Virus record (IMG/VR): IMGVR_UViG_3300036766_002289
Location: 186,001 to 250,000 of that record
DNA length: 64,000 nt
Reading direction: 5' to 3' (one strand)
How positions within the stretch are numbered: position 1 is the first letter of the stretch; each line of letters starts with the position of its first letter. The position numbers and the translations under genes are program-made. This document shows positions 12,035-60,162 of the stretch, piece by piece. The notes beneath the pieces are model-generated. The model had not been told where the DNA came from. It ran no database searches and saw only the letters and a program-made list of their open reading frames with translations.

Positions 12035-12856
12035 ATGAAACAAAACTTAATTGGAAAAATTTATGGGTATCTTGAAGTAATTTCTTGCCTTGGTAGTGAT
12101 CGTAATGGTAAAAAGGCCGCTGTGCATTGGATGTGTAGGTGCAAATGTGGCAATACCGTTGCTGTAACCACTGCCAAACTTAATTTTGGTTTACGTAAAA
12201 GTTGCGGGTGTCTGAAAGTGGAAAAAGCGATAATAAATGGAAAAATAGGGAGTGAGAAGAATAAAACACATAATGGCACCTATACTCCAGAATATAAAAC
12301 ATGGACAATGATTAAAAGTAGATGTAATAATCCAAAATCAAGTGGCTACGAGAATTATGGAGGAAGGGGTATTAAAATTTGTGAGAGATGGAACAACTCA
12401 TTCCAGAACTTTTTAGATGATATGGGGAAGAAGCCAAATACAGATTTTTGCATTGATAGAATAAATGTCAATGAAGGATATTACAAGGATAATTGCCAAT
12501 GGACTAGTTTAAAATCTCAACAAAATAATAAAAGAACAAATATTTATATAGAATTTGGGGGCAATAAAGCAACGTTGGCAGAATGGGCCACCAAAATTGG
12601 AATATGCGGGGCCACTTTAAGAAAACGCATGAAGAATATGTCAATTGAAGACGCCCTAACATCGCCAAAGAAAATGGTGGGCCGCAGTCGTAAACTATCA
12701 ACTGATATTAACTTGAATGCGGTTATTAAAAATTTAAATTTAGCATTAAATCAGATTGGTAGAAATTGCCTTATTCAGCATTTTGGAGAAGCTGGTACTG
12801 ATTTGGTGAATTCTATTAAGGTTTTATCCGAGTTAGTCGATGTAAACATAGCTTAG
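12035..12856 (+). CDS. HNH-type phage homing endonuclease
   Basis: WMCRCKCG, KSCGC, RCNNP...YGGRGIKICERW, IDRINVNEGY...NCQW. Confidence 0.85.
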   Translation: MKQNLIGKIYGYLEVISCLGSDRNGKKAAVHWMCRCKCGNTVAVTTAKLNFGLRKSCGCLKVEKAIINGKIGSEKNKTHNGTYTPEYKTWTMIKSRCNNPKSSGYENYGGRGIKICERWNNSFQNFLDDMGKKPNTDFCIDRINVNEGYYKDNCQWTSLKSQQNNKRTNIYIEFGGNKATLAEWATKIGICGATLRKRMKNMSIEDALTSPKKMVGRSRKLSTDINLNAVIKNLNLALNQIGRNCLIQHFGEAGTDLVNSIKVLSELVDVNIA

Positions 12857-12863
12857 TTGTACC
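12848..12863 (+). promoter_or_regulatory. 16-bp motif copy 1 (ATAGCTTAGTTGTACC), putative phage-specific promoter
   Basis: Consensus copy; followed by AGGAG and ATG at 12875. Confidence 0.75.
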
Positions 12864-13092
12864 AGGAGACTCTCATGCGCATGAAAATTGCTGCCATTTC
12901 TGCTTGTCTGAGTGGAATTTCCCTGATCTCGACCGTGGTTTTTATCCATAATCCGAATATCTTGCTTACTTGTATTTGGCTGGCATCATTATTCATGGGA
13001 ATTACTACATTTTGTCTTTGGTTGGAATGTCGGAGTACCACAAGCCAACCGACACGGCCGACAAGATCAACGTCGAGGGACTTGGAAGAAAA

Positions 13093-13266
13093 ATGACTGT
13101 ACGCGAAGCATTACTTGAAGAATTAACTAATCTCTGGGCGTTAGAAGCCAGTCTTTGACCAGAAAATACTCTTCAGTGTCGTGAAGAGATTCGCTTGGTC
13201 GAAGCGAAATTGGATGAATGGGACAAACTTACTGCTGCTGTGGCAAAAGTATGCCTAAAGGAATGA
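13093..13266 (+). pseudogene. Short ORF interrupted by in-frame TGA (13156-13158); readthrough candidate or pseudogene
   Basis: Frame stays open 35 codons after TGA and ends 1 nt before the next ATG; two 7-bp hairpins follow the TGA. Confidence 0.45.
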
Positions 13267-13684
13267 AATGATGAAAAAATGGTATGAAGAAGTTGTAATT
13301 AATGGCCTATTGCATCATAAGTTTCTTGCAAATGGTTTACTTTATTTAATGGATGATTATAAAGTTACGCCACCGCTACCACAAATTTGCTATAACCACT
13401 ACTGCCGTAAGGTTTTAGGGGAAGAATACCATTCCACAATGTTTGGAACAAGAGAAACTGGTTTTCCAGATTGCTGGTTATGCAATGAGTGTTGGGCAAA
13501 GTTTGATGGCCAAAAGATGAGGGGACGATTTGCGATGATCGGATACTCCCACAATCAGAGTGTGTCTATATTAGCTGCCATTGAAAGAGATTGCGGGAAG
13601 GAATTATTTGAACTTGGTAGGCCAGAAGATGAATCTCGTTATACTGAATCTGTCACCGAATGGGTTGAATGGCAAAATCCCTGG

Positions 13685-13700
13685 ATAGCTTAGTTGTACC
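13685..13700 (+). promoter_or_regulatory. 16-bp motif copy 2
   Basis: ATAGCTTAGTTGTACC upstream of the sigma-like gene. Confidence 0.75.
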
Positions 13701-13739
13701 GATGTTGGCGTGAACAAATAATAGTTAAGAGGGCAAATC

Positions 13740-14753
13740 ATGCACGGCATCCGTAGTATTAATCTGAAGACTTCCGAAATGCAGGAAATGCAGGAAATCA
13801 TGTCCAAGGGCAATACTCTGCTCAAAGAGTGTGCTGAGATGTTGGGCATGAGCAAAGGGGAGTTTCGTGGCAAGCTTTTCAACCGAAAGCTCGACACTAG
13901 CAACCTTTCCGAAGAACAATTCCAAAAGCTAGAAGCAGCTAAGCCCCACATCATGGCAGTCCATGATAAGTGCGAGCTTAAGATTCTTAGTGGTTTCACC
14001 AGAATGGTGCAAAAGCAAGCTAAGGTTGCTGCTTCCAACAGTAGTGATCCCAAGAACGTTTTCTATGAATTCGAGCAAGTTGGTATGCTCGCAGTGTTAG
14101 ACTCCATTTATGGTTACACTAACACGAATATCAAGTTCATTACCTATGTCTGGAAGATTGTCCGCCGCCGCATTAATCTCACGATTAATCGTCTCAATCC
14201 GTTCTGTCCTTTGACGAATGAAGCTATGAATCTTGTGCAGGGTTTTGAAGCGACCAAGGTTAAGTTTAATCGTCAAGTCAATACTGAGGAAGTCGTTGAA
14301 GCGATGGGCATTACGGCTGCTCAGCGTGAAGTTTTGTTTGCTGCAACAACTAAGGTAGTGAACGAATTGCAGGCAGGGCCACAAAGTAATTCGGATCATG
14401 ATTTTGTTGCTAGTGACTACACTGCAATGCGTCGTGGAATTGATGGTGATTACCAAGAAGTTTCCCTTATCCGTAAGGATGCACGTCAAGCAATCAAGAA
14501 TGCAGAATTGAGCGATATTGAATTGCATCTTCTCTTGGGAGAAATGTTCCCTTACACTGGTTGGAGGGAAGATATTGCTGGCAAGTTCATCAATCCAAGG
14601 ACTGGCAAGCGGTATACTCGGGAAGTGACTGGCATCATCGACCGTGCCAAGGATAAGGTGCGCAAGGCTATCAAGTTCCCTCCTGAAGCCCCGAAGGAAA
14701 ATCCGATTATTGACCAGATTTTCGATGAATTGAGTGGCAAATTAGCAGTTTAA
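13740..14753 (+). CDS. Divergent sigma70-family RNA polymerase sigma factor
   Basis: Region 2-like EFEQVGMLAVLDSIYGY...KFITYVWKIVRRRI; region 3-like RQVNTEEVVEAMGIT; region 4-like LSDIELHLL...TREVTGIIDRAKDKVRKAI. Confidence 0.7.
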   Translation: MHGIRSINLKTSEMQEMQEIMSKGNTLLKECAEMLGMSKGEFRGKLFNRKLDTSNLSEEQFQKLEAAKPHIMAVHDKCELKILSGFTRMVQKQAKVAASNSSDPKNVFYEFEQVGMLAVLDSIYGYTNTNIKFITYVWKIVRRRINLTINRLNPFCPLTNEAMNLVQGFEATKVKFNRQVNTEEVVEAMGITAAQREVLFAATTKVVNELQAGPQSNSDHDFVASDYTAMRRGIDGDYQEVSLIRKDARQAIKNAELSDIELHLLLGEMFPYTGWREDIAGKFINPRTGKRYTREVTGIIDRAKDKVRKAIKFPPEAPKENPIIDQIFDELSGKLAV

Positions 14754-16239: not shown

Positions 16240-16255
16240 ATAGCCTAGTTGTACC
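16240..16255 (+). promoter_or_regulatory. 16-bp motif copy 3 (ATAGCCTAGTTGTACC)
   Basis: One mismatch to consensus; upstream of RuvB-like gene. Confidence 0.75.
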
Positions 16256-16275
16256 AGTCTATGCGGAGGTGCTAT

Positions 16276-17346
16276 ATGAGTCAGCTTGAAAAGGTGTTTT
16301 TCCCGATTAATAGTGACCCGCCTTTTGCGGATGATCGACGTGCATATCTTGATTCCACTAATCCAGTTTCGCCTTACTTTGGATTTGTTGGAAATAAGCG
16401 TGCTGTCGATAAGCTAATTCGTATAGACTTTGAGGCCCTTGGCCGCTACAACCACTGTTGCAGTGACCTGTCCGTAGCTTTCCTTGGCCAAGCGGGTTGC
16501 GGTAAGACTGAATTGGCCCGCCGTCATGCCAAGGCCAATAAGCTTCCTTATGTGGAAATCTCTCCTAAAGCGATTAAGACTTGCCATGATCTTCTCATGG
16601 AAATTGCAAGAGTCTGTGCTGCTTCTGGTCTTCCCCTTATTGAAGTAGGTCGCGCACAAAACTATTGGATTCCCCCTTGTAACGTCTTTATTGACGAAGT
16701 TCATGCACTTGCACCGCCTGTAGTGCAAGGTCTACTTAAAGCAACCGAATACAATGACGCAATCCTTGTAACCGACAAGGGTTACACTGCCGACTGTAAA
16801 CGTGTTCACTGGCTCATTGCAACTACCGACCGTGGCAAGTTGTTCGATGCTTTTGATACTCGTTTCAGCAAGGTTATTCTTAATCTTTATACTAAAGATG
16901 AAGTTGCGAAGATTGTTCAGTTTAACAATCCAGATTGGACTTTTGATATCTGTCAGTTGGTTGCACATTATTGTGGACGGATTCCGCGTGAAGCATTGGC
17001 TTTTGCACGGGAAATGAAATTGGAACACAATATGCACTCTGATCTTACTTGGCGTCAAGTAGGGCAGCGTATTGCAAGTGACAACGAAATTGACGAATTT
17101 GGAATGAGTTACAAGCGTTTGGCTATCCTTAAGGCACTTGGGCATGGGCCAATTGCTGAGAAGCGACTGCCGCTTGTAATTGGTGTCAAGGTTGAAGAAC
17201 TAGATAAGTTTATCCTTCCTTGGTTGGTTGCTGATACAGACGATCAGCCAGCTTTGGTTGGGGTCTGTAATAAGGGATATTGCTTGACTGATGCTGGTAT
17301 TGCTGAGTTGAAGTTGAGGAAACTTCCCTATAAGGAGGCAGCATGA
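16276..17346 (+). CDS. ruvB: RuvB-like AAA+ ATPase (Holliday junction branch-migration helicase family)
   Basis: Walker A GQAGCGKT, Walker B FIDEVH, ATT, DTRF Arg finger, GRIPREA sensor II, IDEFG and winged-helix-like C-terminus; GGAGG before ATG 16276. Confidence 0.8.
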   Translation: MSQLEKVFFPINSDPPFADDRRAYLDSTNPVSPYFGFVGNKRAVDKLIRIDFEALGRYNHCCSDLSVAFLGQAGCGKTELARRHAKANKLPYVEISPKAIKTCHDLLMEIARVCAASGLPLIEVGRAQNYWIPPCNVFIDEVHALAPPVVQGLLKATEYNDAILVTDKGYTADCKRVHWLIATTDRGKLFDAFDTRFSKVILNLYTKDEVAKIVQFNNPDWTFDICQLVAHYCGRIPREALAFAREMKLEHNMHSDLTWRQVGQRIASDNEIDEFGMSYKRLAILKALGHGPIAEKRLPLVIGVKVEELDKFILPWLVADTDDQPALVGVCNKGYCLTDAGIAELKLRKLPYKEAA

Positions 17347-17523
17347 TTGTTTGCGACCGTTGTAAAACTGAATGTAGCCATTCGGCAGATTTAAATTTTG
17401 GTTGGTTTGCCCGTCCCTATGGCGTAGCGGCACATCGCTCTTTATTTAAAGGTGATTTATGCCAGCTTTGTAAAGATAATCTATTATTATCAGCAACGTG
17501 TTTTGTTGAAATTTGGCTTAAAA

Positions 17524-17865: not shown

Positions 17866-18172
17866 TGATTGAAACTTATCGTGAGTTGAGAGACATTCTG
17901 AATAAGATGGAAGATGGTCAGCTTAACCAACAGATTCAGGTCATGTTACCACAATTTGACCGTGATAAGCCATTCCCATTGCATCCCGTCATTAGTGCGG
18001 GAACGGTGAAGTATTTTGTTTCTTCAGAAGATGGTGTTCAACAGGATGAGACTCGCAGCAGCGTAGATAACAAGCATAATCCTGAAGAATTTATTTTATT
18101 AGTAGACTGGAATCCATACGATGAGGACGGAATTATCGCGTATGATTTAGGAACAGGGGAACCGATTGAGCC

Positions 18173-21595: not shown

Positions 21596-21596
21596 C

Positions 21597-29891: not shown

Positions 29892-32057
29892 ATGTGGTTT
29901 GAGTTTTCTTTTCGTAAATGGGTATTAACCGAAGGTGTCAATACCGCCGTTCTAGCTGCACAATATAAGAAGAAATTCCCTCAAGCCCCTGACCAAGAAG
30001 CCAACGACAAAATCAATTTAGCCATCGCTGCCGATCCAACTCCCGATAAGAAGTATGTTCCTTGGATTTTCCGTGAACTTATCAATAATAGACTAAGATT
30101 GCCAGAAGATACTCCAGTTACTCTTCAACAATTAGATATATTTAATAAGAGCAAAGCAGTCTTAAAAGGACTTGGTAAAGAACTGGATATCAATAAATAC
30201 GACCGTCCACAACTCTGGCAGACTCTTGGCGAAATTGAAGGCAAGACTACTAAACGTCAAGAAAAAGCAAAAATTAAGCAAGAAGGCTCAGAAAGAATAT
30301 ATGAAGATAAGGAATGGTTGGTCATAAAAATGACTAAACCTGAAGCTTGTCAATATTATGCTAAAGGTACAAAATGGTGTACCTCCGACCCTGAAACTGC
30401 TGCTGGCTATCTAGAGCAAGGCCCATTATTCATGATTTATCATAATGGGCAAATATATGCGCAGGCTCATGTTGAGAGTGGCCAGTTAATGGACCCGCAG
30501 GATGTTCCAATACCACCTAATAAAGTCCCAGAAAAATTAAGGGACATTATAATGAACAACGTTCACCAACAGGACGAAGATGATGATACTTTCAGGGGAA
30601 AAAGAAATCAACTTTTTGGCATTAAAGAAAAGGTTATAACTTATCCAGATGGCTTTTATTGGGGCACTTCAGACCATAAAGATTTTTCTTTAATAGACCC
30701 TTCTGGCTCAGATGAAGTTAACTTAATGATAAGAGACGGATATCTCTATGTAGAAAGACCAAAAGATAAAGACCTAGAAGCCATGCTAAGCAAAAAAGGT
30801 AGTTTAAAAGACTCACTAGCTTCATATAGAACAGCTTCTGCGTGGAATAAATATATCGTCGATTTCATACTAAAAAATAAAGAAATTAGAAATATAAATA
30901 TCATTAGAAATGATTGGAATTTTGGCGACCTGTCCGAGGAAGATAGAAATAAGATATTCACCGCAAGAAAAGACTTAATGCCAGAAATTGATTTTAAGAC
31001 TTCAGACGGCAAATTATGGGCACATCAAGGTTTAAGATCGTATGTATTGTTATCCGATTGGTATCCAATACTTTCTATGCAATTAGAGACTAAAAACTAT
31101 TTAAATTATGGAAACTGGCTAAATCAGCCTAAATCTCAAATATTGAAAGATGAAGCACTTGATAAATCCAAATATAGCTTAGCAACAACGGAATTTTTAC
31201 TAAAAAACAAGATAGAACACGCTCCAGATAGAAATACAAAGCATTATAACAGTTGGAAATTTGAAGATTTAATGCCTGAGCATCGCGCAATTATACTAAA
31301 GAATTATCCAGATTTCTTAGATAATCTGACTTACCACACTAAAGAATCTGGCGATCAAGGTGAATTATTAAAAAGATTAGCCTCAAATAGTAGTTTTTAT
31401 GATATTAAACCATTTGATGACAAAACAGTGATTTTAAGACAAAATGATACAATTGCTAAAGACTCTTTAACCACTGGTGGTAGTGGTAGCTCATACTACA
31501 GTGGCACTCTGACAAATATCATAGGTGGCAGGGATGAGAGAGCAAAAATCATAAAAATACTGCGAGATAAAGTACATTCATTTGGAGATGATGAAACCAT
31601 TTCTTGGGGATTTGAAAAAGCTTTGAAAGATAACGACTTAGCAAAAATTAAAAGAGAACTACCCTTTTTTGATACCAATTTATTAGATAAAATAGACAAG
31701 AAATCTTTTAATGTGTCTTCATCCCTGGCTAATTCAATCGGTAAACATGTTTTATCTAAATTCATGGAAATTTTATACAATGACATTAAGCCCTTCGAGA
31801 ATCATAAATTTAAAATAAGGTTAAAAGATAATGCCATTCATTATGTTGTAAATTACGATAGTGCCATAGAAGCTTATAAGCAAGATAAGAGTTTGAAACC
31901 ACTTGAAAATGAATATCTAGCATGGAAAAATACGATCAAAATACCACCCGAAACTCTAGAACAACAAACAACAAATATTCCTAGAGGAATGGATAAAGAA
32001 GCGTTTGTTAATGGAATAAAGGACTATCACAGAAATAATTATGAGTTCGTATATTAA
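29892..32057 (+). CDS. Large hypothetical protein (721 aa), candidate head-internal protein
   Basis: Long ORF; DPT..KKY..W and YYAKGTKWCTS motifs; N-terminus FSFRKWVLTE; CTAAATA upstream. Confidence 0.6.
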   Translation: MWFEFSFRKWVLTEGVNTAVLAAQYKKKFPQAPDQEANDKINLAIAADPTPDKKYVPWIFRELINNRLRLPEDTPVTLQQLDIFNKSKAVLKGLGKELDINKYDRPQLWQTLGEIEGKTTKRQEKAKIKQEGSERIYEDKEWLVIKMTKPEACQYYAKGTKWCTSDPETAAGYLEQGPLFMIYHNGQIYAQAHVESGQLMDPQDVPIPPNKVPEKLRDIIMNNVHQQDEDDDTFRGKRNQLFGIKEKVITYPDGFYWGTSDHKDFSLIDPSGSDEVNLMIRDGYLYVERPKDKDLEAMLSKKGSLKDSLASYRTASAWNKYIVDFILKNKEIRNINIIRNDWNFGDLSEEDRNKIFTARKDLMPEIDFKTSDGKLWAHQGLRSYVLLSDWYPILSMQLETKNYLNYGNWLNQPKSQILKDEALDKSKYSLATTEFLLKNKIEHAPDRNTKHYNSWKFEDLMPEHRAIILKNYPDFLDNLTYHTKESGDQGELLKRLASNSSFYDIKPFDDKTVILRQNDTIAKDSLTTGGSGSSYYSGTLTNIIGGRDERAKIIKILRDKVHSFGDDETISWGFEKALKDNDLAKIKRELPFFDTNLLDKIDKKSFNVSSSLANSIGKHVLSKFMEILYNDIKPFENHKFKIRLKDNAIHYVVNYDSAIEAYKQDKSLKPLENEYLAWKNTIKIPPETLEQQTTNIPRGMDKEAFVNGIKDYHRNNYEFVY

Positions 32058-34581: not shown

Positions 34582-34597
34582 ATAGCTTAGTTGTACC
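34582..34597 (+). promoter_or_regulatory. 16-bp motif copy 4
   Basis: ATAGCTTAGTTGTACC followed by GAGGT and ATG at 34610. Confidence 0.75.
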
Positions 34598-34609: not shown

Positions 34610-34771
34610 ATGGCTAGTAAAAATGACGAAGGCGCAGCATTTTTGATTCTTGTGTTTGTAAGTGCTGTAATTGGTGCCTGCATAAGTTTTGGTATCAATG
34701 GCACAATACAATCCGCCTTCCTTGGGTTTGGCATAGGTGCAGTAATACCGATTATCATGTTGATGCTATAG
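34610..34771 (+). CDS. Small two-TM membrane protein (not in the ORF track)
   Basis: MASKNDEGAAFLILVFVSAVIGACISFG...MLML; RBS present; bracketed by two motif copies. Confidence 0.7.
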   Translation: MASKNDEGAAFLILVFVSAVIGACISFGINGTIQSAFLGFGIGAVIPIIMLML

Positions 34772-34783
34772 CTTAGTTGTACC
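34768..34783 (+). promoter_or_regulatory. 16-bp motif copy 5
   Basis: ATAGCTTAGTTGTACC upstream of rIIB-like gene. Confidence 0.75.
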
Positions 34784-34822
34784 AGTGGATTTGTTCTGAA
34801 ACCTAAAAACAGGAGAACTTTC

Positions 34823-35725
34823 ATGATTCCTAGTGGCGTTATCATCTCGGATTCTGGCACCATCACTGTCTCTGTCAATGGCAAGCTATTTTCTTTTGCC
34901 AATGACCACATGAACTACAATCTTGTGAAGGAAGCACTCAAGAAGAATGATTTAGATTCTATTGAAAAGCTTGCCGATATTCCCAAATCTGTTACCGCAT
35001 ATACGGGTGCTGCGGTGGTTGTCAAGGATGGCATGGTCCTTTATAAGGACAAACCGCTTGACAATAGTTTAACTCGCCGCATTCTTAACCTTATGAATGA
35101 AGGCTTCCCGTTTGAACCTATGCTTAAGTTCCTTGAGAATTTGATGCTCAATCCTTCGTGTCATGCGGTCAAGGAACTTTATGGTTTCCTTGTTCATCGC
35201 AACCTGCCGATTACTGTGGATGGGTGCTTTCTGGCATATAAGTCGGTTACGCCTGAATACCTGGATTGGAACTCTCGGTCTATCGACAATAAGGTTGGTG
35301 CTAAGATTGAGCCTATGGAACGTAATGAAGTCGATGATAACTGGCGTGAAGCCTGCTCCAGTGGTTATCATGTTGGCTCAATCGAGTATGTTGATGGTTT
35401 CCATCGCCATGATGGGCATATTATGATTGTTAAGGTCAATCCGAAGGATGTGGTTAGCGTGCCTGTCAATGAATGCACTAAATGCCGCACCTGTTGGTAT
35501 GAAGTCGTGGGTGAAATGCAAGAGGAAGAATTGGTTCGTCCTGTCTACGCCACTACCGATACCAGCTATACCCCGTCTGTGCCTACCACTTGGTCTGACG
35601 GCGCGGCTTGGCCAGATAGTGACGATGAAGAAAATGATGAAGATGATTATGAAGATTGGGGCGGTGACGAAGACGACGATGATGACGATGAAGACGATGA
35701 TGAATTCGGCCCCGCTGAGCATTGA
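34823..35725 (+). CDS. rIIB: T4 rIIB-like protein
   Basis: FLENLMLNPS, ELYGFL, ITVDGCFLAYK, M.R..VDD....CSSGYHVG, VKVNPKDVVSVP, KCRTC.YEVV; acidic tail. Confidence 0.85.
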   Translation: MIPSGVIISDSGTITVSVNGKLFSFANDHMNYNLVKEALKKNDLDSIEKLADIPKSVTAYTGAAVVVKDGMVLYKDKPLDNSLTRRILNLMNEGFPFEPMLKFLENLMLNPSCHAVKELYGFLVHRNLPITVDGCFLAYKSVTPEYLDWNSRSIDNKVGAKIEPMERNEVDDNWREACSSGYHVGSIEYVDGFHRHDGHIMIVKVNPKDVVSVPVNECTKCRTCWYEVVGEMQEEELVRPVYATTDTSYTPSVPTTWSDGAAWPDSDDEENDEDDYEDWGGDEDDDDDDEDDDEFGPAEH

Positions 35726-36673: not shown

Positions 36674-36689
36674 ATACCTTAGTTGTACC
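36674..36689 (+). promoter_or_regulatory. 16-bp motif copy 6 (ATACCTTAGTTGTACC)
   Basis: One mismatch; upstream of rIIA-like gene. Confidence 0.75.
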
Positions 36690-36735: not shown

Positions 36736-38862
36736 GTGAAGCTGGAAGACAAGGTTGGCAAGGTCATTATTTCCGCTGGTATGAAGGTTACTAATTTCCG
36801 CATCAAGGTCAACAAGCATTCTTTTAAGCAGCTTTATAGCGGTCTTTACAGCGATAAGATTCACGCTATCATTCGTGAACTTTCCACTAATGCCGCTGAT
36901 GCGCATGTTTCTGCTGCCAAGCCCGATGTTCCCTTTGAAGTTCACCTGCCTTCTGAAATGGAACCATATTTCTCTGTCAAGGACTATGGTACTGGCCTTT
37001 CCCCAGAGCAAATCGCTGGTGAGAACGGCATTTATATCACTTTCTTTGAATCTGACAAGTCCCACAGTGACGATTTTACTGGTTGTTTGGGCTTGGGGTC
37101 CAAGTCTCCCTTCGCTTATACTGATAACTTCATGGTCGAAAGTCGTTATAATGGCAAGCGTTACAGCTATGTTTGTTTCCATAACGAATCTGGTGAACCG
37201 TGTATTGCTCAAATGGGCGAATGCGATACGGATGAGCCTAATGGTCTTAAGGTCGAATTTGCCGTTAAGACGGATGATTTCTATGAATTTCATGGTAAGG
37301 CTGAAGACGTTTTGAGTTGGTTTAAGGTCAAGCCTAACGTTTATGGCAAGGAATTCAAGCCTAACGTGCATGAATATCTCCGTAAGACGGAGCGTTATGG
37401 TGTTCGCAAGGAACGCGAAGGGCATTCTATGGTGGTCATGGGCAATGTTGCCTATAAGGTTAGTGCTGGAGATTTCTCTTATAATAAGCTTAATGACGTT
37501 GAGCGGGATGTTCTTGAATGGGGCGTTGATCTTTTCGTGGACATTGGGGACGTTGAATTCGTTCCTAGCCGTGAAAAGCTGGCAATGACTGATAAGACGA
37601 TTCGTGGCGTTCGCAAATTTCTTGGTGACGCCATCAAGTCTATTCAGGAAGAATTGGAAATTCATGTGCAGAAGTCGCCTTCGGTTTGGAAGGCGCGTCG
37701 AATGCTTCACGATATTAAGCATTCGATTTTGGGCAAGGTCCGTAGTATGACTACGGTAATGTATAATGGTAAGGAAATTTGTGACTATATTAGTCTAAAT
37801 AAGTTCTTTGCGGATAAATTGGTTGCTCGGCCTTTGTTTGAGTCTCTTTCGCTCAAGAAGTCGCATTACAGGCGAGCTAGTGAAGAGAAGATTTACTGCG
37901 ATACGACTAAGATTTATTTTAATGATTTGGAGCATGGCGGCTATGCTCGAATCACGAATGATCTTCGCAATAATGACACTAGTAAGGCTTATTGCGTGAG
38001 TGGTGCCACCAAGGAGTTTCTTGAAGAAACTGGTATTGGGGAAGTGGCAATTAGGGCTTCCAGTCTGCCTAAGACGGAGCGCGCCAAGCGTGAACGGGTC
38101 GAGGGTGAAGCTGGCGGGTATGTTAAGCGGACTGTCTTGCAGGAATATGTTCCTAATGGTGGTTCCTACGCTGGTAATTGGTGGAATGACGTTGAGGTTG
38201 ACCTCAATGCTGGTGGGGTTTACGTTGTAATTTCCTATGGTCAGATTGTTATGGAAGGCGAGGGCCGTAAGCGCACGCCAGAAGACTATCGGGAGAGGTA
38301 TAATGTTGTTAAGGCTTTGAATCCAGCCTTTAAGTTGCTTGCAATCCGTCCCGCTCACTTGGAGAAGATGGGCAAGCATAAGAGCAAGTGGATTAAGTTT
38401 GAAGATTACCTTAACATTCTGCTCAAGGAAAAGGAACATTTGATTGCGGTTACGTTGGCATACTTGCAGTATGAAGAGTGTGAGAACAGGGACCATTACG
38501 AACGTTTTAGTAAGGAAGACTTTGAAGATCATTCTTTGTTTGGTGAATTCCTTGAAAAGTTGGTCGATGCTAAGGCTCAATGTAAGAATACTGAAGCGAT
38601 TGCCTATTCGGAGTTAAATCGGTATGCTTCGGCCAAGTGCCCTGTTCTTGTTAAGAAGCTTGGCCTTGACCACATGCGGCGTAAGGTTGAAGAAGAATAT
38701 CCTCTTCTTCCTATGGTTGACTGGTATGGTCGTAATAAGCCTGAGTTTGTTAAATCGGTTTCTGAGTATATTCGGGCTTTGGATGATCGACGTTTAGATG
38801 GTATTATCGCACACCATTCTTCCGTTAGGGAGGCGGAAGTGCATCTTGAGGAAGCGGTGTAA
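36736..38862 (+). CDS. rIIA: T4 rIIA-like protein with N-terminal GHKL ATPase domain
   Basis: LYSDKIHAIIRELSTNAADAH, VKDYGTGLS, GCLGLGSKSPFAYTD, VVMGNVAY, PSREKL; GTG start after GGAG. Confidence 0.9.
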   Translation: MKLEDKVGKVIISAGMKVTNFRIKVNKHSFKQLYSGLYSDKIHAIIRELSTNAADAHVSAAKPDVPFEVHLPSEMEPYFSVKDYGTGLSPEQIAGENGIYITFFESDKSHSDDFTGCLGLGSKSPFAYTDNFMVESRYNGKRYSYVCFHNESGEPCIAQMGECDTDEPNGLKVEFAVKTDDFYEFHGKAEDVLSWFKVKPNVYGKEFKPNVHEYLRKTERYGVRKEREGHSMVVMGNVAYKVSAGDFSYNKLNDVERDVLEWGVDLFVDIGDVEFVPSREKLAMTDKTIRGVRKFLGDAIKSIQEELEIHVQKSPSVWKARRMLHDIKHSILGKVRSMTTVMYNGKEICDYISLNKFFADKLVARPLFESLSLKKSHYRRASEEKIYCDTTKIYFNDLEHGGYARITNDLRNNDTSKAYCVSGATKEFLEETGIGEVAIRASSLPKTERAKRERVEGEAGGYVKRTVLQEYVPNGGSYAGNWWNDVEVDLNAGGVYVVISYGQIVMEGEGRKRTPEDYRERYNVVKALNPAFKLLAIRPAHLEKMGKHKSKWIKFEDYLNILLKEKEHLIAVTLAYLQYEECENRDHYERFSKEDFEDHSLFGEFLEKLVDAKAQCKNTEAIAYSELNRYASAKCPVLVKKLGLDHMRRKVEEEYPLLPMVDWYGRNKPEFVKSVSEYIRALDDRRLDGIIAHHSSVREAEVHLEEAV

Positions 38863-43691: not shown

Positions 43692-44423
43692 AGATGAGTA
43701 CTCATCAATTAAAACATCTTCAGACTCAGCGTAATGCTATGGAAGCATTGGTTGTCAGTGCTAGAGCGAAGATGGTCGAATCTCAGCGGCAGATGGAAGC
43801 TCATTTAAAAGAACTTAAGCGTATTGATGCCGAAATTGGGAAATTGCAACGTAAGGTTATTGTAAGTGAACATGCGATTGTTCGGTATTTTGAGCGTGTT
43901 TTAGGGTATGATATAGAAGACATTAAGACACAGATTCTTCCGCCCGATGTAAAACAACTAGTGAATGGAACATTTCAAGTTGGCATTCATAAAGTCAAAG
44001 TTAAGGACAATACCATTGTAACGGTATTGACGAATAGCGATGAAACTTAGTAATATTATTCCTGAACATGTTGATTCCCCGACAAGGCTTTCCCTTGTAA
44101 GGCTTGATGTTTTTGTACAATGGCTCAAAAAGAACAAACCAGACATTGTTAAGGAAGCTTATAGCGATTTAGGTAAGAAGCAACTTCAGGAAGCGTTCGA
44201 CGAGCTTGGAAATGCTACTGAACTTTGGAGACCATGATGCACAAATTTCTTGAAGAGGCTAAGGGAATGTCTAGTTGTACAGCGAGTGCTATGATGCTAG
44301 AGAAGCTGGTCGGAGAAGTGTTATGGATGGATAAGATGTTTACCAAACACCAATCAGCTATACTCCTTGAGTCTGTGCATCTTCGTATGCTTCTGAATTA
44401 GCAGAATTGTATGGAGAAAAATA

Positions 44424-45392
44424 ATGATTATTACACTGAATGATAAGTTGAAAGAATTGGATTACAATCCGACCTCAACAGGTCAAATTATTGACATACT
44501 AGAAAACAAAAAGACCGAGTATGTCAATAAAGGCAAGACTGTAAAGCAAAGTCTCTTTTACATTGAAGACAATATAGAAGGCAAGATTGGCCACAAAAAC
44601 TATGTAGAATATCTACTTGCTGCATGGGATTCCCATTACGGTATTGTCGTTAGTCCTGATATTATTTGGTATCTACTTCAATGCGAATTAACCAGCATTG
44701 TTGCTACCAATGCCGAAACATACCGTGATTTGTTTACTACTTCCAAGGAAAAGAAAACCATTACCATCCAGTCTAATTCCTTGACAGTAATGCCTTTAGA
44801 TGCTTTAATGCAAGCTCTCATAAAAGAGATTCCTTCTGAAGTAACGTCATTTCTGCCTGAATTCTCAACATCGAGTCAGCGAGCTATTTTTGCTCGTTTT
44901 GCTGCATTCGCAGACATGGTATCGCCGTATTACAATTACTGTATGTATTGCTGTGGGTTTCCAGCTATTGACGTGCGTGGCGACCAAGCAGATTGGGCGA
45001 AATTACATTATAAATGGAAATGTCTTGGTAAGATGTTTTCCAAACACCAAGACTACATTTCTCGCGTGGATAATGCTATTGCTCAAATTTGCGGGTCACT
45101 TAATGATGCTGACTTCTGGCGGGATATGTTTAATCTGGACAGGTGTGGGTCTGGCCACCAATATGAAGTTAGTGGTTGGTTGACCAATCTATATTTGCAG
45201 GAACCAGACACTCGTTTCCCTGAAAACTATCCTTCTCATGTATCTTTAGTGGCTTATAAACAACTCAATACGCAGAAGGATTATGAAATGAAGTCAGGGT
45301 TACTCGCAAGTAAGAAAGAAGGAAGTTTCTTGATTCCTGATTTTGCTCATATCATTTATGAGAAGCGTCCAGAGGTCACGATGCATGTATAA
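44424..45392 (+). CDS. DUF4419-like protein
   Basis: AWDSHYGIVVSPDIIW, NAETYR..F, PEFST, CGFP.I...G...DW, GSG...VSGW. Confidence 0.7.
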   Translation: MIITLNDKLKELDYNPTSTGQIIDILENKKTEYVNKGKTVKQSLFYIEDNIEGKIGHKNYVEYLLAAWDSHYGIVVSPDIIWYLLQCELTSIVATNAETYRDLFTTSKEKKTITIQSNSLTVMPLDALMQALIKEIPSEVTSFLPEFSTSSQRAIFARFAAFADMVSPYYNYCMYCCGFPAIDVRGDQADWAKLHYKWKCLGKMFSKHQDYISRVDNAIAQICGSLNDADFWRDMFNLDRCGSGHQYEVSGWLTNLYLQEPDTRFPENYPSHVSLVAYKQLNTQKDYEMKSGLLASKKEGSFLIPDFAHIIYEKRPEVTMHV

Positions 45393-54265: not shown

Positions 54266-54805
54266 ATGGATAGGAAAGCAAAGGCTCGTGTCGCAATCGC
54301 ATTTGACGTTCTTCAAAGCGTTGATTCATTAAAAGTCACTAATGATGGTTGGTACCTAGCGGACCCAACTGGCAAGTATTATAAAGACCAAAATGGTGAG
54401 GAATGCATTGATCTTAGGGATTTTAAGGGCGATGTAAAAGAAGAGGCGACTAAACACTTATCCAAATTGCAGAAATGTGAAGTCTGCGCTCTTGGGGCAT
54501 GTGTAATTAGTCAAGTTAAGCTGTTCAATAAACTGCCAATGAGTAAGTTACTATCTGGGGACAGACCTAATACGAGAGAAATTAATCCTAACAGAGATAT
54601 GGTTTCTAAATCACTATCAAGGTTCTTTTCCCAGGAACAACTTAATTTGATCGAGACAGCATTTGAAGCAGGCGGTCATCATCTTATAGTGGCTAACCCT
54701 GACCCTAATGCTGTTGAGTTTGGAAGAAATTATGATAGCCCGAAAAAGCGTTTAAAAGCAATTATGGGCAATATCATAGTGAACGATGGTGAATTCTGTC
54801 CTTAA
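54266..54805 (+). CDS. Hypothetical protein, tandem paralog B
   Basis: Same N- and C-termini as paralog A. Confidence 0.8.
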   Translation: MDRKAKARVAIAFDVLQSVDSLKVTNDGWYLADPTGKYYKDQNGEECIDLRDFKGDVKEEATKHLSKLQKCEVCALGACVISQVKLFNKLPMSKLLSGDRPNTREINPNRDMVSKSLSRFFSQEQLNLIETAFEAGGHHLIVANPDPNAVEFGRNYDSPKKRLKAIMGNIIVNDGEFCP

Positions 54806-57800: not shown

Positions 57801-58415
57801 CTACTTCCCACCACCGAATGCGAAAGCCAATTGGACTTACGGGGACCGTAGGACTACCCTTTATAAGCATTGGTATATGTCCGTAACCCATACTGTTAAA
57901 GACTTTAGGGCTATGGTGTGGCAGTTTGCCCAAAATAAATGCATATCTAGAAGGAAAAGTGGTTTCAAAACAGAAGAACTAGCAGTAAAATGGTGTGAGA
58001 ACAAAGTAGAAATGGAAATAGTAGACGCCAGTTTAACTCCGCAGTATGCAGGTTCAGGAATATGACATATTTAGTTTTGTATCTAGCAATTGGCTTTTTT
58101 GTTGCTGTTTCATCTTTATCATTGATAGATGACGCACCAACTTGGGCCAAAGTTACGTGTTTTTTAATTGACTTGTTTTTGTGGCCATTACACCTGTTGG
58201 TTGCAGCAGGCATATGGATATTACAGAGGACTAAAAAATGACAATCGAAGAAATGATTAAGCGGGATAACAGAACTTGGGAAGAAATGTCTTTAAGGGAA
58301 AGAGTTAGTCTTTTTCTTAGGCATAGCAGAGATTGTGAAGTTCATAATAGATGGCCAGTAAAACCATGTGATTGTGGCTTAAGCATAGTCAGTGCTGAAT
58401 TGGATAAGATTCTTG

Positions 58416-58560
58416 GCGGTTGATGGTAAGTGGCAAACCAACGGTGAAGGGCCGCTCTGGGACCAATACAACGACAAAAAGTATTCGAGTGATTCGCGGT
58501 GACTCGGAAAAAGTATGTCAATACGTACCTGGCGAGAAGGTTCGATTCCTTCCAACCGCA
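58416..58560 (+). ncRNA. tRNA-like RNA (145 nt) with expanded central region
   Basis: Acceptor stem GCGGTTG/CAACCGC plus discriminator A; D arm GGT-AAGTGGCAA-ACC; T arm GAAGG-TTCGATT-CCTTC; about 95 nt between D and T arms; no encoded CCA. Confidence 0.75.
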
Positions 58561-58563
58561 CTT

Positions 58564-58579
58564 ATACCTTAGTTGTACC
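58564..58579 (+). promoter_or_regulatory. 16-bp motif copy 7 (ATACCTTAGTTGTACC)
   Basis: Directly after the tRNA-like RNA; ATG at 58581. Confidence 0.75.
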
Positions 58580-58778
58580 AATGATGATAAGAAACGAACA
58601 ACGTGATAAAGAAATTGAACTAGGTGGTGCTGTTTACGCTGCCTGTATCAAGATTTTTGAAGATATGGAACATGAAGAAGAAGTTTATGGGAATGGACAC
58701 CACATGGCCCAAGATGTAGCTGCTTTTGCTGAACATTTGTTAAATGAGCGATGGCGAGATAAATTAGGTGGAGCCTAC

Positions 58779-58794
58779 TTAGCTTAGTTGTACC
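58779..58794 (+). promoter_or_regulatory. 16-bp motif copy 8 (TTAGCTTAGTTGTACC)
   Basis: Followed by AGAGGA and ATG at 58805. Confidence 0.75.
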
Positions 58795-59160
58795 AGAGGA
58801 AAGCATGGATACCGATAATTTGATCCTTCTTTTGGACAAATTGACCAAGCATTGCTACGTCAAGCAAAAGTATTGCATAGATGATTGTAAGGGATGTGGT
58901 GGGTTGCGCGGCAACCATGCAATGAGTTGCTATGTAGAGGAAGCAGAAAAAATCGTAAAGCAATATAACACTAAAACAGAAGAATTTGCTTTAGAGGAAG
59001 TGAAATGAAACTGTTTCTTTTTGGTCTTTGGCTAGGTCTAACCTTCGGCAGTACAATAACTTACATCGTTTGTGACCTTAATCGGCCTAAGATCAGAATT
59101 GAAGTGCGGACTTTACCTTCACCCTGTTATGTTCCAGTTGGGCGATGAACGGAGAGTATA

Positions 59161-59694
59161 ATGAATATTGTAGAAAATGCCGATAAGATTGCTGAAAAAG
59201 CCCATAAGGGGCAGCTTCGCAAGTGGAGCAATAATGTGCCGTACATTGTCCACCCAATTGGAGTTACCGAAAAAGTTAAGACTCTTGATGGTGTTGACGA
59301 TATTGATCTGGCGGCGGCAAAATTGCATGATGTTCTTGAAGATTGCGGCGAACATTGGGCCGCTGTTATTGAGGAAGAATGCGGCAAGGAAGTTCTCGAT
59401 TTAGTTAAGGAATTAACGTTCCCGACAGAAGGCGCGGAATGGGCCAATCGTTCCCGCGCAGAAAAGAATGTTATTCGATTTGCTCAAATGGAGCGAATGA
59501 CGCAAAGGGCCAAGCGTATTAAGATGGTTGATCGTTGGTATAATCTCAACGACATGAAGAATGCTCCCTATAAGCTTATCAAGAAGACCACTGAGGAATC
59601 TTGGAAGCTTTTGGAAATCTGCGGCGGTGCAGATAAGGCAATGGCCAAAGAACTTGAGGAAGCAATTAAAAACTTGGAAAGGCGGCTCAACTAG
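59161..59694 (+). CDS. RelA/SpoT-type HD hydrolase (small alarmone hydrolase/Mesh1-like)
   Basis: AHKGQLRK...PYIVHP..V, AAKLHDVLED, VKELT, IKMVDRWYNL. Confidence 0.85.
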   Translation: MNIVENADKIAEKAHKGQLRKWSNNVPYIVHPIGVTEKVKTLDGVDDIDLAAAKLHDVLEDCGEHWAAVIEEECGKEVLDLVKELTFPTEGAEWANRSRAEKNVIRFAQMERMTQRAKRIKMVDRWYNLNDMKNAPYKLIKKTTEESWKLLEICGGADKAMAKELEEAIKNLERRLN

Positions 59695-59697
59695 CTC

Positions 59698-59713
59698 ATA
59701 GCTTAGTTGTACC
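59698..59713 (+). promoter_or_regulatory. 16-bp motif copy 9
   Basis: ATAGCTTAGTTGTACC, intergenic. Confidence 0.75.
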
Positions 59714-60146
59714 GTTGTTCTTAGAAAGGCGGTTGAATTAACATGGGCTATTGTGCGTGGATTCAAAAGGCTGAGTTCAGCATTCTTTCGGAACGAATCC
59801 CAGAAGCTTTTGCTGCTGTAATGGCTTCTAAAGGCTGTTATCATTCTCCGAAGAATGCTGTCAAAGATGTTAAACATTTTGAACATCTTCCGCTTTTGCT
59901 TCAGTTTACCGAGGCTGTCAAAGCCACATATGGTTTTGTGTTGACGCCTAATAAGTCTGGGGATATTGACAAGATTTCCCATGAATGGGAAAAGGTGCAT
60001 GGTGATGAACTTTGGGAAGCACTTGCACCCTTCGTCAAAAGTGGTTCTTATATTCAATGGTGCGGTGAAGATGGTGAAAAATGGCGGAATGTATTCCAAG
60101 GTGGGAAAACCAAGCAAGTTAAGCCAGTTTTAACCTGGCCCGAGTG

Positions 60147-60162
60147 ATAGCTTAGTTGTACC
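60147..60162 (+). promoter_or_regulatory. 16-bp motif copy 10
   Basis: ATAGCTTAGTTGTACC, at gene junction. Confidence 0.75.

What the first reader, a model, noticed from the sequence alone, without database searches (positions are those of the whole stretch)
12848..60162. Ten co-oriented copies of a 16-bp motif (ATAGCTTAGTTGTACC) mark a candidate phage-specific early regulon
Seen: copies start at 12848, 13685, 16240, 34582, 34768, 36674, 58564, 58779, 59698 and 60147. All are on +, at gene junctions, with at most 1 mismatch and an invariant TAGTTGTACC core, 1-46 nt before a start codon (usually with an RBS in between). The motif is non-palindromic and does not resemble -35/-10 or T4 TATAAATA. 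Downstream genes include the sigma-like factor, RuvB-like ATPase, rIIB and rIIA. Inference: a contiguous promoter read by a phage-encoded (possibly virion-delivered) RNA polymerase or factor, at the top of a transcription cascade. A recombination-site role is the alternative.
Basis: partly seen in the sequence, partly recalled or inferred. Interest (0 to 1): 0.85.

Follow-up and report, generated by a model that had tools for sequence, protein, structure and literature searches.

The report
Phage-specific promoter of a megaphage
The 16-base motif is very probably the core promoter of a large gene set in an uncultured phage of about 590 kb; it occurs about a hundred times per genome and has changed in step across related phages, which points to a phage-made factor steering the host RNA polymerase.

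Summary
The window is bases 186001-250000 of a 390-kb IMG/VR contig from a sediment phage of about 590 kb. In the 164 kb of that genome I could read, the invariant core TAGTTGTAC occurs 98 times (93 on +, about 1.3 expected). About 53 copies form an array of small single-gene units.

Copies sit at gene junctions and track the downstream gene. Many follow hairpins or tRNA genes, and two lie 11 nt before tRNA genes. Relatives carry the same element at orthologous junctions (sigma, AAA ATPase, rIIB, rIIA), with a complete lineage-specific switch from AGTTGTAC to AGCTGTAC.

In the complete 595-kb relative LR756511.1 the element fills one half of the genome and is absent from the replication and structural modules. 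No phage RNA polymerase was detectable there. The 'sigma-like' gene is a genuine full-length sigma70-family factor, conserved across the clade.

Best reading: a monopartite phage-specific promoter read by host core polymerase with a phage specificity factor, probably this sigma. Timing (early or middle) and the reader protein are inferred, not shown. No RNA data were available.

The parts
12848..12863 (+). Motif copy (exact). The upstream HNH-endonuclease ORF stops on the motif's second TAG. AGGAG follows at once, and the ATG of a 73-aa lipoprotein-like ORF lies 11 nt after the motif.
13685..13700 (+). Motif copy (exact), 39 nt before the sigma70-family gene. Orthologous junctions in relatives carry the lineage's own variant.
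13740..14753 (+). Sigma70-family factor (337 aa, regions 2 to 4). It is the candidate reader of the motif and is itself a member of the regulon.
16240..16255 (+). Motif copy (1 mismatch, ATAGCC...) before the AAA ATPase gene (start 16261 or 16276, end 17346). The same junction carries the motif in relatives.
34582..34597 (+). Motif copy (exact) before a 53-aa ORF (34610-34771). The junction is conserved in the relative L128 (8459).
34768..34783 (+). Motif copy (exact) 39 nt before rIIB (34823-35725). The junction is conserved in L128 (8664) and LR756511.1.
36674..36689 (+). Motif copy (ATACC...) 46 nt before rIIA (GTG 36736 to 38862). The junction is conserved in L128 (9948) and LR756511.1 (L019 19959).
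44266..44281 (+). Eleventh, degenerate copy (core TAGTTGTACA with a diverged 5' part) in the gap before the DUF4419 gene (44424-45392). Its function is doubtful.
58564..58579 (+). Motif copy (ATACC...) directly after a tRNA-like remnant. An ATG lies 1 nt after the motif (68-aa ORF).
58779..58794 (+). Motif copy (TTAGC...). AGAGGA follows at once, and the ATG of a 67-aa ORF lies 10 nt after the motif.
59698..59713 (+). Motif copy (exact), after the HD-domain gene and 29 nt before a 134-aa ORF.
60147..60162 (+). Motif copy (exact), immediately followed by a sigma70-type promoter. The gene starts at GTG 60208.
60163..60190 (+). Host-type promoter TTTACA-16-TAGAAT with a TG extension. The orthologous gene in LR756511.1 has TTGACC-16-TATAGT and no motif. 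This shows that a separate host-type promoter class exists beside the motif class.

Best explanation
The motif is the core promoter of a phage-specific transcription class. It is a single contiguous element of 16-18 bp: (A/T)(T/A)A(G/C)C(T/C)TAGTTGTAC(C), followed by A and then A or G. Transcription probably starts at the A residues 2-3 nt after GTAC.

The phage appears to have no RNA polymerase of its own. The element is therefore most likely read by the host core enzyme carrying a phage-encoded specificity factor. The best candidate is the conserved full-length sigma70-family protein encoded at 13740-14753, which is itself transcribed from a motif copy (positive feedback).

The regulon comprises about 100 or more transcription units in the accessory, host-takeover half of a genome of about 590 kb. 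It includes rIIA, rIIB, the sigma gene, an AAA ATPase operon with ArdC, RNA ligases, tRNA genes, and an array of about 50 tiny genes that each have their own promoter.

Shown: location, orientation, copy number, conservation and lineage-specific variation, absence of a recognisable polymerase in a complete relative, and the sigma fold.

Inferred: that it is a promoter at all, the start site, the reader protein, and the timing class.
For: 1. Real and hugely over-represented. Ten copies in the window against 0.03 expected. The 9-mer core occurs 98 times in 164 kb of the same genome against about 1.3 expected, 93 on the gene strand.

2. At gene junctions. Only 2 of 92 copies lie inside a continuous ORF. 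The gap to the next start codon is tight (median 27-28 nt, about 80% within 50 nt), while the gap to the upstream stop varies. In LR756511.1, 41 of 51 long junctions have the motif nearer the downstream gene; in the own genome only 12 of 21 do.

3. A Shine-Dalgarno sequence can begin 1-2 nt after the motif, so the RNA must start at or before the motif's 3' end.

4. Copies lie 11 nt before tRNA-Glu (L005 6041) and tRNA-Pro (L012 4150), and directly after other tRNA genes. The signal therefore acts on transcription, not translation.

5. Stable hairpins lie in the 50 nt upstream in 23-34% of copies against about 10% of random windows. Several are textbook terminators.

6. Relatives carry the element at the same junctions. 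Four of five window genes that have LR756511.1 orthologues have it upstream there, and three of three junctions match in L128. It is also present before the sigma and AAA genes in seven further contigs.

7. Complete base switch. The own genome has 98 AGTTGTAC and 0 AGCTGTAC; LR756511.1 has 134 AGCTGTAC and 6 AGTTGTAC. The T type is shared only by the phages whose sigma is 74-75% identical to ours; all more distant ones are C type.

8. In the complete LR756511.1 genome the element fills 0-300 kb and is absent from 300-595 kb, where DNA polymerase III alpha, ribonucleotide reductase, helicase, portal and baseplate genes lie.

9. No polymerase found there. Pfam or PHROGs on 21 ORFs of 650 aa or more, signature-motif regexes, and phmmer --max with RpoB, RpoC and T7 polymerase all gave nothing.

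10. The 337-aa protein is a sigma70-family factor. Its family profile hits PDB sigma factors (SigH 6e-6, SigA 3.5e-4). All top 50 Foldseek hits are primary sigma chains aligned over the full length. Atlas look-alikes are sigma families.

11. The published overview of jumbo phages states that T4-like 'group 2' jumbo phages lack a polymerase and encode sigma factors (PMC7824862; PMC13282480).
Against: - No transcript data. No RNA run holding this genome could be listed, so neither the start site nor promoter activity is shown.
- A full-length sigma with region 4 would normally use a bipartite promoter. Here no position upstream of the block or at -10 distance downstream is conserved.
- The sigma shows only two conservative T-type-specific replacements at otherwise invariant positions, L17M and L163M, so co-variation of sigma and motif is not demonstrated.
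- If sigma reads its own promoter, something else must make the first sigma. A host-type promoter upstream of the sigma operon is seen in relatives but not in this window.
- Only 164 of about 590 kb of this genome was read. The polymerase search was exhaustive only for a relative with 48-54% protein identity, and very divergent polymerases would escape it.
Confidence: 0.65

Rival explanations
1. The motif is a promoter for a phage-encoded RNA polymerase that escaped detection. This could be a very divergent single-subunit or two-barrel enzyme, possibly carried in the virion. It is the first reader's main idea.
For: The architecture is that of T7-group promoters: one contiguous, high-information block ending at the likely start, with a lineage-specific base switch. 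Several large ORFs of the relative have no family match at all: 824, 975, 1060, 1077, 737 and 1641 aa. So does the 721-aa ORF of the window.
Against: The complete relative genome has no Pfam or PHROG polymerase hit, no NADFDGD or T7 A/B/C signature, and no phmmer --max hit to RpoB, RpoC or T7 polymerase. The clade has a T4-like portal and a conserved sigma factor, which is the make-up of polymerase-less jumbo phages.
Confidence: 0.12
2. The motif acts in RNA rather than DNA. It could be a cleavage or binding site that cuts long polycistronic transcripts into single-gene units, or that marks 5' leaders for stability or translation.
For: It lies between nearly all genes of the arrays, on the sense strand only, just before ribosome-binding sites. 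Conserved blocks follow it in the arrays.
Against: Terminator-like hairpins directly upstream imply that transcripts end before it. It precedes tRNA genes at a fixed 11 nt. It has no secondary structure of its own, and the proposed hairpin in the following leader has no covariation support. No other promoter-like element is conserved in these junctions.
Confidence: 0.08
3. The motif is read by an unmodified host holoenzyme, using the primary sigma or an alternative sigma of an unknown host. That would make it an ordinary host-type early promoter.
For: Early genes of polymerase-less phages are normally read by the host holoenzyme. The dense array of small genes resembles the SPO1 and T4 early regions (own knowledge).
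Against: It bears no resemblance to -35/-10, to the Bacteroidota -33/-7 consensus (a comparison by eye with consensus sequences recalled from my own knowledge, not a tool result), or to sigma54 (by eye, from memory) or sigma28 (not compared). Its information content is far above that of housekeeping promoters. Canonical TTGACA/TATAAT promoters also occur in these phages as a separate class. A fixed T/C difference across about 100 sites between close relatives fits a phage-borne reader better.
Confidence: 0.07
4. The motif is a recombination or cassette-boundary site, such as a shuffling hot spot or integron-like site.
For: It flanks many small, variable genes, and gene content of the arrays differs between relatives.
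Against: It is non-palindromic and strictly co-oriented with genes, at a constrained distance from start codons. It is conserved at orthologous junctions of core genes such as rIIA, rIIB and sigma. The genes it flanks are not paralogues. A whole-genome base switch is not expected of recombination sites that lack a dedicated enzyme.
Confidence: 0.03

Closest known systems
T4 late promoters (TATAAATA, read by host core polymerase with phage sigma gp55, gp33 and the gp45 clamp)
   Same: A monopartite phage-specific element near -10 with no -35 partner, in a T4-related phage without its own polymerase.
   Different: The sequence is different and about twice as long. Here the element serves accessory and early-type genes and is absent from the structural module. 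TATAAATA is not enriched. No gp55 or gp45 homologue was detected by phmmer. The candidate reader is a full-length sigmaA-like protein, not a minimal sigma.
T7-group promoters of single-subunit RNA polymerases
   Same: One contiguous, highly conserved block of about 17-23 bp ending at the start site, many near-identical copies per genome, and specificity switched by single bases between relatives (as with T7 and T3).
   Different: No single-subunit polymerase gene is detectable in a complete relative genome. The copy number is about ten times higher.
SPO1 transcription cascade and host-takeover module (host sigmaA, then phage sigma gp28, then gp33/34)
   Same: Phage sigma factors redirect the host core enzyme. 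A compact block of many small genes each has its own promoter and terminator.
   Different: The SPO1 small-gene block uses host-type early promoters, and its phage-sigma promoters are bipartite. Here the small-gene array uses the phage-specific monopartite element.
phiKZ and AR9 early promoters read by a virion multisubunit polymerase
   Same: Dozens of copies of a phage-specific motif before early genes of a giant phage, independent of host sigma.
   Different: No beta or beta' homologues are found. Those motifs are AT-rich and shorter (own knowledge; PMC13282480 reports 28 early promoters in phiKZ).
T4 middle promoters (MotA box at -30 plus a sigma70 -10 element)
   Same: A phage-specific 9-bp box that replaces the -35 element. 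The 5' part of the motif, A(T)AGCTTAG, loosely resembles the MotA box (own knowledge).
   Different: No -10 element lies 11-13 bp downstream. Start codons lie as close as 1-12 nt after the motif.

Membership tests
Sigma70-type bipartite promoter | Two hexamers (-35 and -10) separated by 16-18 bp, with the start about 7 nt after the second | tested here: not met
   Conservation is one contiguous block. No position upstream of it or 15-20 bp downstream is conserved. Ribosome-binding sites and start codons lie 1-12 nt after it in about a third of copies. The sigma70 scan of the array is not above shuffles.
T7-group single-subunit polymerase promoter | A contiguous, highly conserved block of about 17-23 bp ending at the start site | tested here: met
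   A block of 16-18 conserved positions with a purine-rich +1/+2. This is anatomy only; the start site is not mapped.
T7-group single-subunit polymerase promoter | A single-subunit polymerase gene in the genome | tested here: not met
   None in the complete relative LR756511.1 by Pfam, PHROGs, motif regex or phmmer --max with T7 polymerase. None in the 164 kb read of the own genome. The rest of the own genome was not read.
phiKZ/AR9-type promoter of a phage multisubunit polymerase | Split beta and beta' homologues encoded by the phage | tested here: not met
   No NADFDGD-type motif and no phmmer hit to RpoB or RpoC at E up to 10 in any ORF of 60 aa or more of LR756511.1.
T4 late promoter | TATAAATA near -10, before late structural genes, with gp55 and gp45 | tested here: not met
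   TATAAATA is not enriched. The motif is absent from the structural module. There is no significant gp55 or gp45 hit, although a very divergent homologue cannot be excluded.
T4 middle (MotA-dependent) promoter | A box centred at -30 plus a sigma70 -10 element 11-13 bp downstream | tested here: not met
   No -10-like conservation downstream outside the dense array. MotA and AsiA homologues were not searched.
Promoter class of a phage-encoded sigma70-family factor on host core polymerase | The phage encodes a sigma70-family protein and lacks its own polymerase | tested here: met
   Sigma. It is conserved in 31 relatives. No polymerase: (relative only).
Promoter class of a phage-encoded sigma70-family factor on host core polymerase | A conserved element upstream of, and co-oriented with, many genes, varying with the phage lineage | tested here: met
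Promoter class of a phage-encoded sigma70-family factor on host core polymerase | The sigma directs initiation at the element | not testable with these tools
   This needs in vitro transcription or a reporter assay. The sequence co-variation test was weak, with only L17M and L163M.
Sigma70 family (protein at 13740-14753) | Regions 2, 3 and 4 with the sigma fold | tested here: met
   The family profile against PDB gives SigH 6e-6 (region 2) and SigA 3.5e-4 (regions 2-3), plus a sub-threshold, negative-scoring local stretch that resembles region 4.2 by eye (TRxxxxxIxxxAxxKxR). The AlphaFold model has pLDDT 76. All top 50 Foldseek PDB hits are sigmaA chains aligned over about 345 columns, although TM is only 0.33 because the domains are arranged differently. 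Pfam itself gave no hit.
Intrinsic terminator | A G+C-rich hairpin followed by a U tract within the element | tested here: not met
   The motif has no self-complementarity. Hairpins lie upstream of it.
Site-specific recombination or cassette site | Inverted-repeat core, a dedicated recombinase, and variable cassettes bounded by sites | tested here: not met
   The motif is non-palindromic. It is conserved at orthologous junctions of core genes, and the flanked genes are not paralogues. A recombinase link was not examined.

The most novel reading that the evidence does not exclude
A full-length sigmaA-like phage factor, or an as yet unrecognised phage enzyme, recognises a single contiguous 16-18 bp element without any -35 partner. 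It is available at the moment of infection, for example delivered with the DNA. A 590-kb phage would then run more than 100 transcription units independently of host sigma from the start. The T-type and C-type lineages would be naturally orthogonal factor and promoter pairs.
Probability: 0.2. Interest if true: 0.8.

Novelty: new member of a known kind. Interest (0 to 1): 0.58.

Why it matters
Genomes of 'huge phages' of about 0.6 Mb are known only from metagenomes, and nothing is known about how they are transcribed.

- This element gives a sequence-level map of one whole transcription class: about 100-130 units covering half the genome, including arrays of about 50 tiny genes that each have their own promoter. 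These tiny genes are prime candidates for host-takeover and anti-defence proteins.
- It gives a concrete, testable factor and promoter pair: the sigma gene at 13740-14753 and the motif.
- The clean T/C switch between lineages is a natural experiment in promoter-specificity evolution.
- The motif can be used to annotate gene starts, small genes and operon structure in this clade.

Tried and rejected
- RNA evidence. No RNA run could be listed for the window stretch or for the dense array.
- Literature. Full-text searches for the core sequences and for promoter motifs of huge or jumbo phages found no description of this element. Only the general statement that polymerase-less jumbo phages carry sigma factors was found.
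- A 5' leader hairpin after the motif in the dense array. RNAalifold predicts nothing, and a named helix (TTAGGG/CCCTAA) is 72% paired, no better than shuffles. Rejected as a supported structure.
- Treating TTGTAC as a -35 element with the conserved T(G/A)T(G/A)AT block of the array as -10. The spacer is only 9 nt and the block is absent outside the array. Rejected.
- T4-late-like TATAAATA and genome-wide sigma70 matches in LR756511.1 are not enriched overall. Restricted to intergenic DNA, sigma70-like sites are mildly enriched (25 against 13 +/- 3.5) and scattered.
- No other long conserved word was found in the motif-free half of LR756511.1.
- Single exact matches to the 16-mers in about 130 unrelated IMG/VR contigs are chance hits inside coding-like sequence. 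The one exception is L027, on contig _002288 of the same sample.
- Sigma and motif co-variation. Only two conservative replacements were found. Inconclusive.
- A tRNA at 58496-58561 is not confirmed by ARAGORN or Rfam.
- The tool's terminator scan, which requires a U tract, shows no enrichment in L001. The hairpin enrichment comes from my own folding of the upstream 50-mers.

Full report
**1. The observation**

All are on the + strand. Six are exact and four have one mismatch. Dinucleotide-preserving shuffles give 0.03 matches. The 10-mer TAGTTGTACC is invariant in all ten. An eleventh, degenerate copy with the core TAGTTGTACA lies at 44266-44281.

Aligning the flanks shows no conservation upstream of the 16-mer. 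Downstream there is only a preference for A, then A or G. All credible genes of the window are on +.

Each copy sits at a gene boundary. In five copies the upstream ORF stops on one of the motif's two TAG triplets, and in two more a TGA overlaps its first base. The next start codon follows after 1 to 46 nt, in most cases behind a Shine-Dalgarno sequence.

**2. What the window is**

The window is bases 186001-250000 of IMGVR_UViG_3300036766_002289, a 390,039-bp contig from a sediment metagenome. The sigma protein of the window is also recorded on a contig of 590,099 bp, so the phage genome is about 0.59 Mb.

No phage record matches the DNA. By protein, the nearest GenBank record is LR756511.1, an unannotated 595,163-bp 'uncultured phage' with rIIA 54% identical. 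IMG/VR holds a closer relative, IMGVR_UViG_3300003310_000099 (373 kb, rIIA 74% identical).

**3. The motif genome-wide**

Pattern scans of IMG/VR brought in other pieces of the same contig. Together with the window I could read 164,452 bases of it. These hold 98 copies of the 9-mer TAGTTGTAC, 93 on + and 5 on -, where about 1.3 are expected.

- The consensus is (A/T)(T/A)A(G/C)C(T/C)TAGTTGTAC(C), followed by A (79 of 93) and then A or G. Nothing is conserved further out.
- Only 2 of 92 copies lie inside a continuous ORF.
- Between contig positions 293.8 and 316.7 kb, 53 copies lie in 20.9 kb of known sequence at a median spacing of 357 bp. Each precedes a small ORF, mostly of 38-113 aa.
- These small ORFs are not paralogues of one another. 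Many have orthologues in the corresponding arrays of the two relatives. The repeated element is therefore not a by-product of gene duplication.
- The two commonest exact 16-mers (23 and 13 copies) occur nowhere in contig regions 1-33 kb, 57.5-158.8 kb and 317.7-390 kb.

**4. Anatomy that points to transcription initiation**

(a) The distance from the motif to the next start codon is constrained (median 27 nt; 82% within 50 nt). The distance to the upstream stop varies. In LR756511.1 the motif is nearer the downstream gene in 41 of 51 junctions of 100 nt or more; in the own genome this holds for only 12 of 21.

(b) In many copies a Shine-Dalgarno sequence begins 1-2 nt after the motif, as at 12848 and 58779. 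The RNA must therefore begin at or before the 3' end of the motif. This excludes a role as a -35 element.

(c) Copies precede tRNA genes at a fixed 11 nt (tRNA-Glu at L005 6041 and tRNA-Pro at L012 4150). Others directly follow tRNA genes (L003 1851, L012 7494). The signal therefore does not act in translation.

(d) The 50 nt upstream fold into stable hairpins (-12 kcal/mol or lower) in 23% of copies in the own genome and 34% in LR756511.1, against about 10% of random windows. Several are textbook terminators a few bases before the motif. A unit of terminator, motif, leader and gene, repeated dozens of times, needs a promoter after each terminator. The motif is the only conserved element there.

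**5. Comparative evidence**

In the 42 kb around rIIA of LR756511.1 the exact motif is absent. A related one, n-T-T-G-(C/A)-AGCTGTAC-(A/T/C), stands directly before the orthologues of the sigma gene, the AAA ATPase, rIIB and rIIA.

I fetched the whole record. AGCTGTAC occurs 57 times on + and 77 times on -, against about 9 per strand expected.

- Fifty-five + copies lie between 0.7 and 19.2 kb. They form an array of about 50 small genes, each with a hairpin, a T-rich stretch, TTATAAAGCTGTACT, a conserved leader and a Shine-Dalgarno sequence.
- The - copies are spread over 19-300 kb.
- The region 300-595 kb has essentially none. That half holds DNA polymerase III alpha, a DEAD helicase, SbcC, ribonucleotide reductase, a T4-type portal and baseplate proteins. 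It contains no other long conserved word.

The closer relative has ATAGCTTAGCTGTACC, AAAGCTTAGCTGTACC and ATACCTTAGCTGTACC at the same three junctions as window 34582, 34768 and 36674. It has at least 25 exact copies and two dense arrays of 27 and 28 copies.

The base switch is complete. The own genome has 98 AGTTGTAC and no AGCTGTAC. LR756511.1 has 134 AGCTGTAC and 6 AGTTGTAC.

I then used homologues of the sigma protein to fetch further relatives. The variant follows relatedness:

| Sigma identity to ours | Motif variant |
|---|---|
| 100%, 75%, 74% | ...TTAGTTGTACC |
| 70%, 67%, 64% | ATAGCTTAGCTGTACC |
| 59% | ATCTTAGCTGTACC |
| 53% | TT(A/G)CAGCTGTACC |
| 49% | TTAGCTGTACA |
| 48% | LR756511.1 form |
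| 31% (G+C 57%) | no recognisable copy |

About a hundred sites changing together along the phage tree is what is seen when a promoter co-evolves with one dedicated reader protein.

**6. Who reads it**

The complete relative genome shows no RNA polymerase.

- Pfam on the 20 other ORFs of 650 aa or more (all 21 of that size except the rIIA orthologue), with PHROGs added for the nine that had no informative Pfam match, found none.
- No ORF of 60 aa or more carries a NADFDGD-type or T7 A/B/C signature.
- phmmer --max with E. coli RpoB and RpoC and with T7 polymerase finds nothing at E up to 10.

The T4-type portal and the lack of a polymerase place the clade with the 'group 2' jumbo phages. These are described as lacking a polymerase and encoding sigma factors (PMC7824862; PMC13282480).

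The 337-aa product of 13740-14753 has no Pfam hit and only a weak PHROG hit. A profile of 20 family members matches PDB sigma factors: SigH at 6e-6 over region 2 and SigA at 3.5e-4 over regions 2-3, plus a sub-threshold, negative-scoring local stretch that resembles region 4.2 by eye. The AlphaFold model (pLDDT 76) gives only primary sigma chains among its top 50 Foldseek hits, aligned over the full length. ESM Atlas neighbours are sigma families. It is single-copy in LR756511.1 by its own family profile.

It is therefore a genuine, divergent, full-length sigma factor. It is conserved wherever the motif is found, and it is itself preceded by the motif.

A test for T-type-specific residues found only L17M and L163M at positions invariant in seven C-type sigmas, which is weak. 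A sigma with region 4 reading a monopartite element would be unusual. If the start is at the A residues after GTAC, the block would span roughly -16 to +2. That is the stretch a sigma can contact through regions 3, 2 and 1.2 without a -35 element (own knowledge).

**7. Place in the cascade**

Host-type promoters exist as a separate class.

- Right after motif 60147 lies TTTACA-16-TAGAAT with a TG extension. The orthologue in LR756511.1 has TTGACC-16-TATAGT and no motif.
- Sigma70-like sites are about twofold enriched in intergenic DNA of LR756511.1 (25 against 13 +/- 3.5) and scattered over the genome.
- In four relatives, a conserved CTTGACAAACC...TGGTATACT or TATATT promoter stands before the DUF6166 gene that immediately precedes the sigma gene.

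This suggests a sequence: the host holoenzyme makes the first sigma, and sigma then turns on the motif regulon, including its own gene. That arrangement is not present in this window. The order of events is a hypothesis.

Gene content of the regulon fits early or delayed-early functions: rIIA, rIIB, an AAA ATPase operon with ArdC, HD-domain and RNA-ligase genes, tRNAs, and dozens of tiny proteins.

**8. Rivals**

- An undetected phage polymerase remains possible, because several large ORFs have no assignment.
- An RNA-level site is disfavoured by the upstream terminators and the tRNA cases.
- A host-sigma promoter is disfavoured by the high information content, the separate canonical class and the lineage switch.
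- A recombination site is disfavoured by orientation, spacing, and conservation at core-gene junctions.

**9. Verdict**

The promoter reading is well supported by anatomy and comparison, but no start site has been mapped. 'Early' and 'top of the cascade' remain open.

In kind, this is a phage-specific promoter class, which is a known kind. It is newly described for an uncultured clade of phages of about 0.6 Mb. Its notable features are monopartite high-information architecture, 100-130 copies, arrays of single-gene units, and a clean specificity switch.

Noticed in passing
window 58496-58561: A tRNA-like 3' half (T arm GAAGGTTCGATTCCTTC plus acceptor end) lies directly before motif copy 58564. 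ARAGORN calls no tRNA and Rfam gives no tRNA hit. It is probably a remnant or an aberrant tRNA gene. Similar uncalled tRNA-like pieces flank motifs at L013 about 3560-3589, L001 about 1577 and L003 about 1361.
   Followed up: partly
window 60163-60190: A canonical host-type promoter (TTTACA-16-TAGAAT with TG) lies immediately after a motif copy, so the gene at 60208-60513 has two promoters. Its orthologue in LR756511.1 has only a host-type promoter (TTGACC-16-TATAGT).
   Followed up: partly
L159 about 9592-9640; L178 about 535-585; L180 about 40-90; L160 about 9437-9480: A conserved CTTGACAAACC...TGGTATACT or TATATT sigma70-type promoter follows a motif copy in front of the DUF6166 gene that precedes the sigma gene in four relatives. 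This is a possible host-polymerase bootstrap of the phage sigma. It is absent from the window.
   Followed up: partly
L005, L003 and L001 (contig 293.8-316.7 kb); L116 700-19200; L154 and L135: Arrays of about 30-55 tiny genes (mostly about 40-110 aa), each with its own motif and often its own hairpin. The genes are not paralogous within a genome but are partly orthologous between phages. A T4 Rnl1-like RNA ligase sits inside the array (L001 2200-3333). These are candidate host-takeover or anti-defence genes.
   Followed up: partly
L001 (array copies, e.g. 6836-6874); L116 (e.g. 17080-17110): Within the arrays the motif is followed by a conserved leader block: AATTAGG(G/T)TGT(G/A)ATT...CCCTAAC...GGAG here, and TTACCTCTAAC...AAGGAG in LR756511.1. 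A hairpin is not supported by covariation and the function is unknown.
   Followed up: yes
L012 3093-9342; L013: The same genome has a tRNA array of 25 tRNA genes in 6.3 kb, plus six more nearby, with motif copies inside the array.
   Followed up: partly
L010 6801-7967; L006 3126-4760 and 7918-8907: A TnpB / IS605 OrfB gene, a PARP-like protein with a WGR domain, and an ADP-ribosylglycohydrolase lie in the motif-bearing part of the genome.
   Followed up: no
window 29892-32057: The largest ORF of the window besides rIIA (721 aa) has no Pfam or PHROG match at all.
   Followed up: no
L124 44141-48052; L126 31017-33593 (LR756511.1): The ribonucleotide reductase large subunit (with LAGLIDADG and Hom_end endonuclease domains) and the T4-type portal gene of the relative both carry inteins.
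   Followed up: no
LR756511.1 415292 (+), 287330 (-), 171921 (-); L019 about 18640: A second recurring promoter-like word, TTGACAAAC-N13-TAGTAAAGT (-35 TTGACA, 16-nt spacer, -10 TAAAGT), occurs in the relative.
   Followed up: no
window 34784-34822 and L128 8680-8720: The rIIB leader between the motif and the ATG is almost identical in two phages whose rIIA proteins are 74% identical. This suggests a regulatory role for the leader.
   Followed up: no
L027 2534-2549 (IMGVR_UViG_3300036766_002288, 187 kb, same sample): One good motif copy (ATACCTTAGTTGTACC, then a Shine-Dalgarno sequence and ATG of an RNA ligase gene) lies on a second large contig of the same sample. The sum 390 + 187 kb is close to the 590-kb assembly, so this contig is probably the rest of the same genome.
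   Followed up: no
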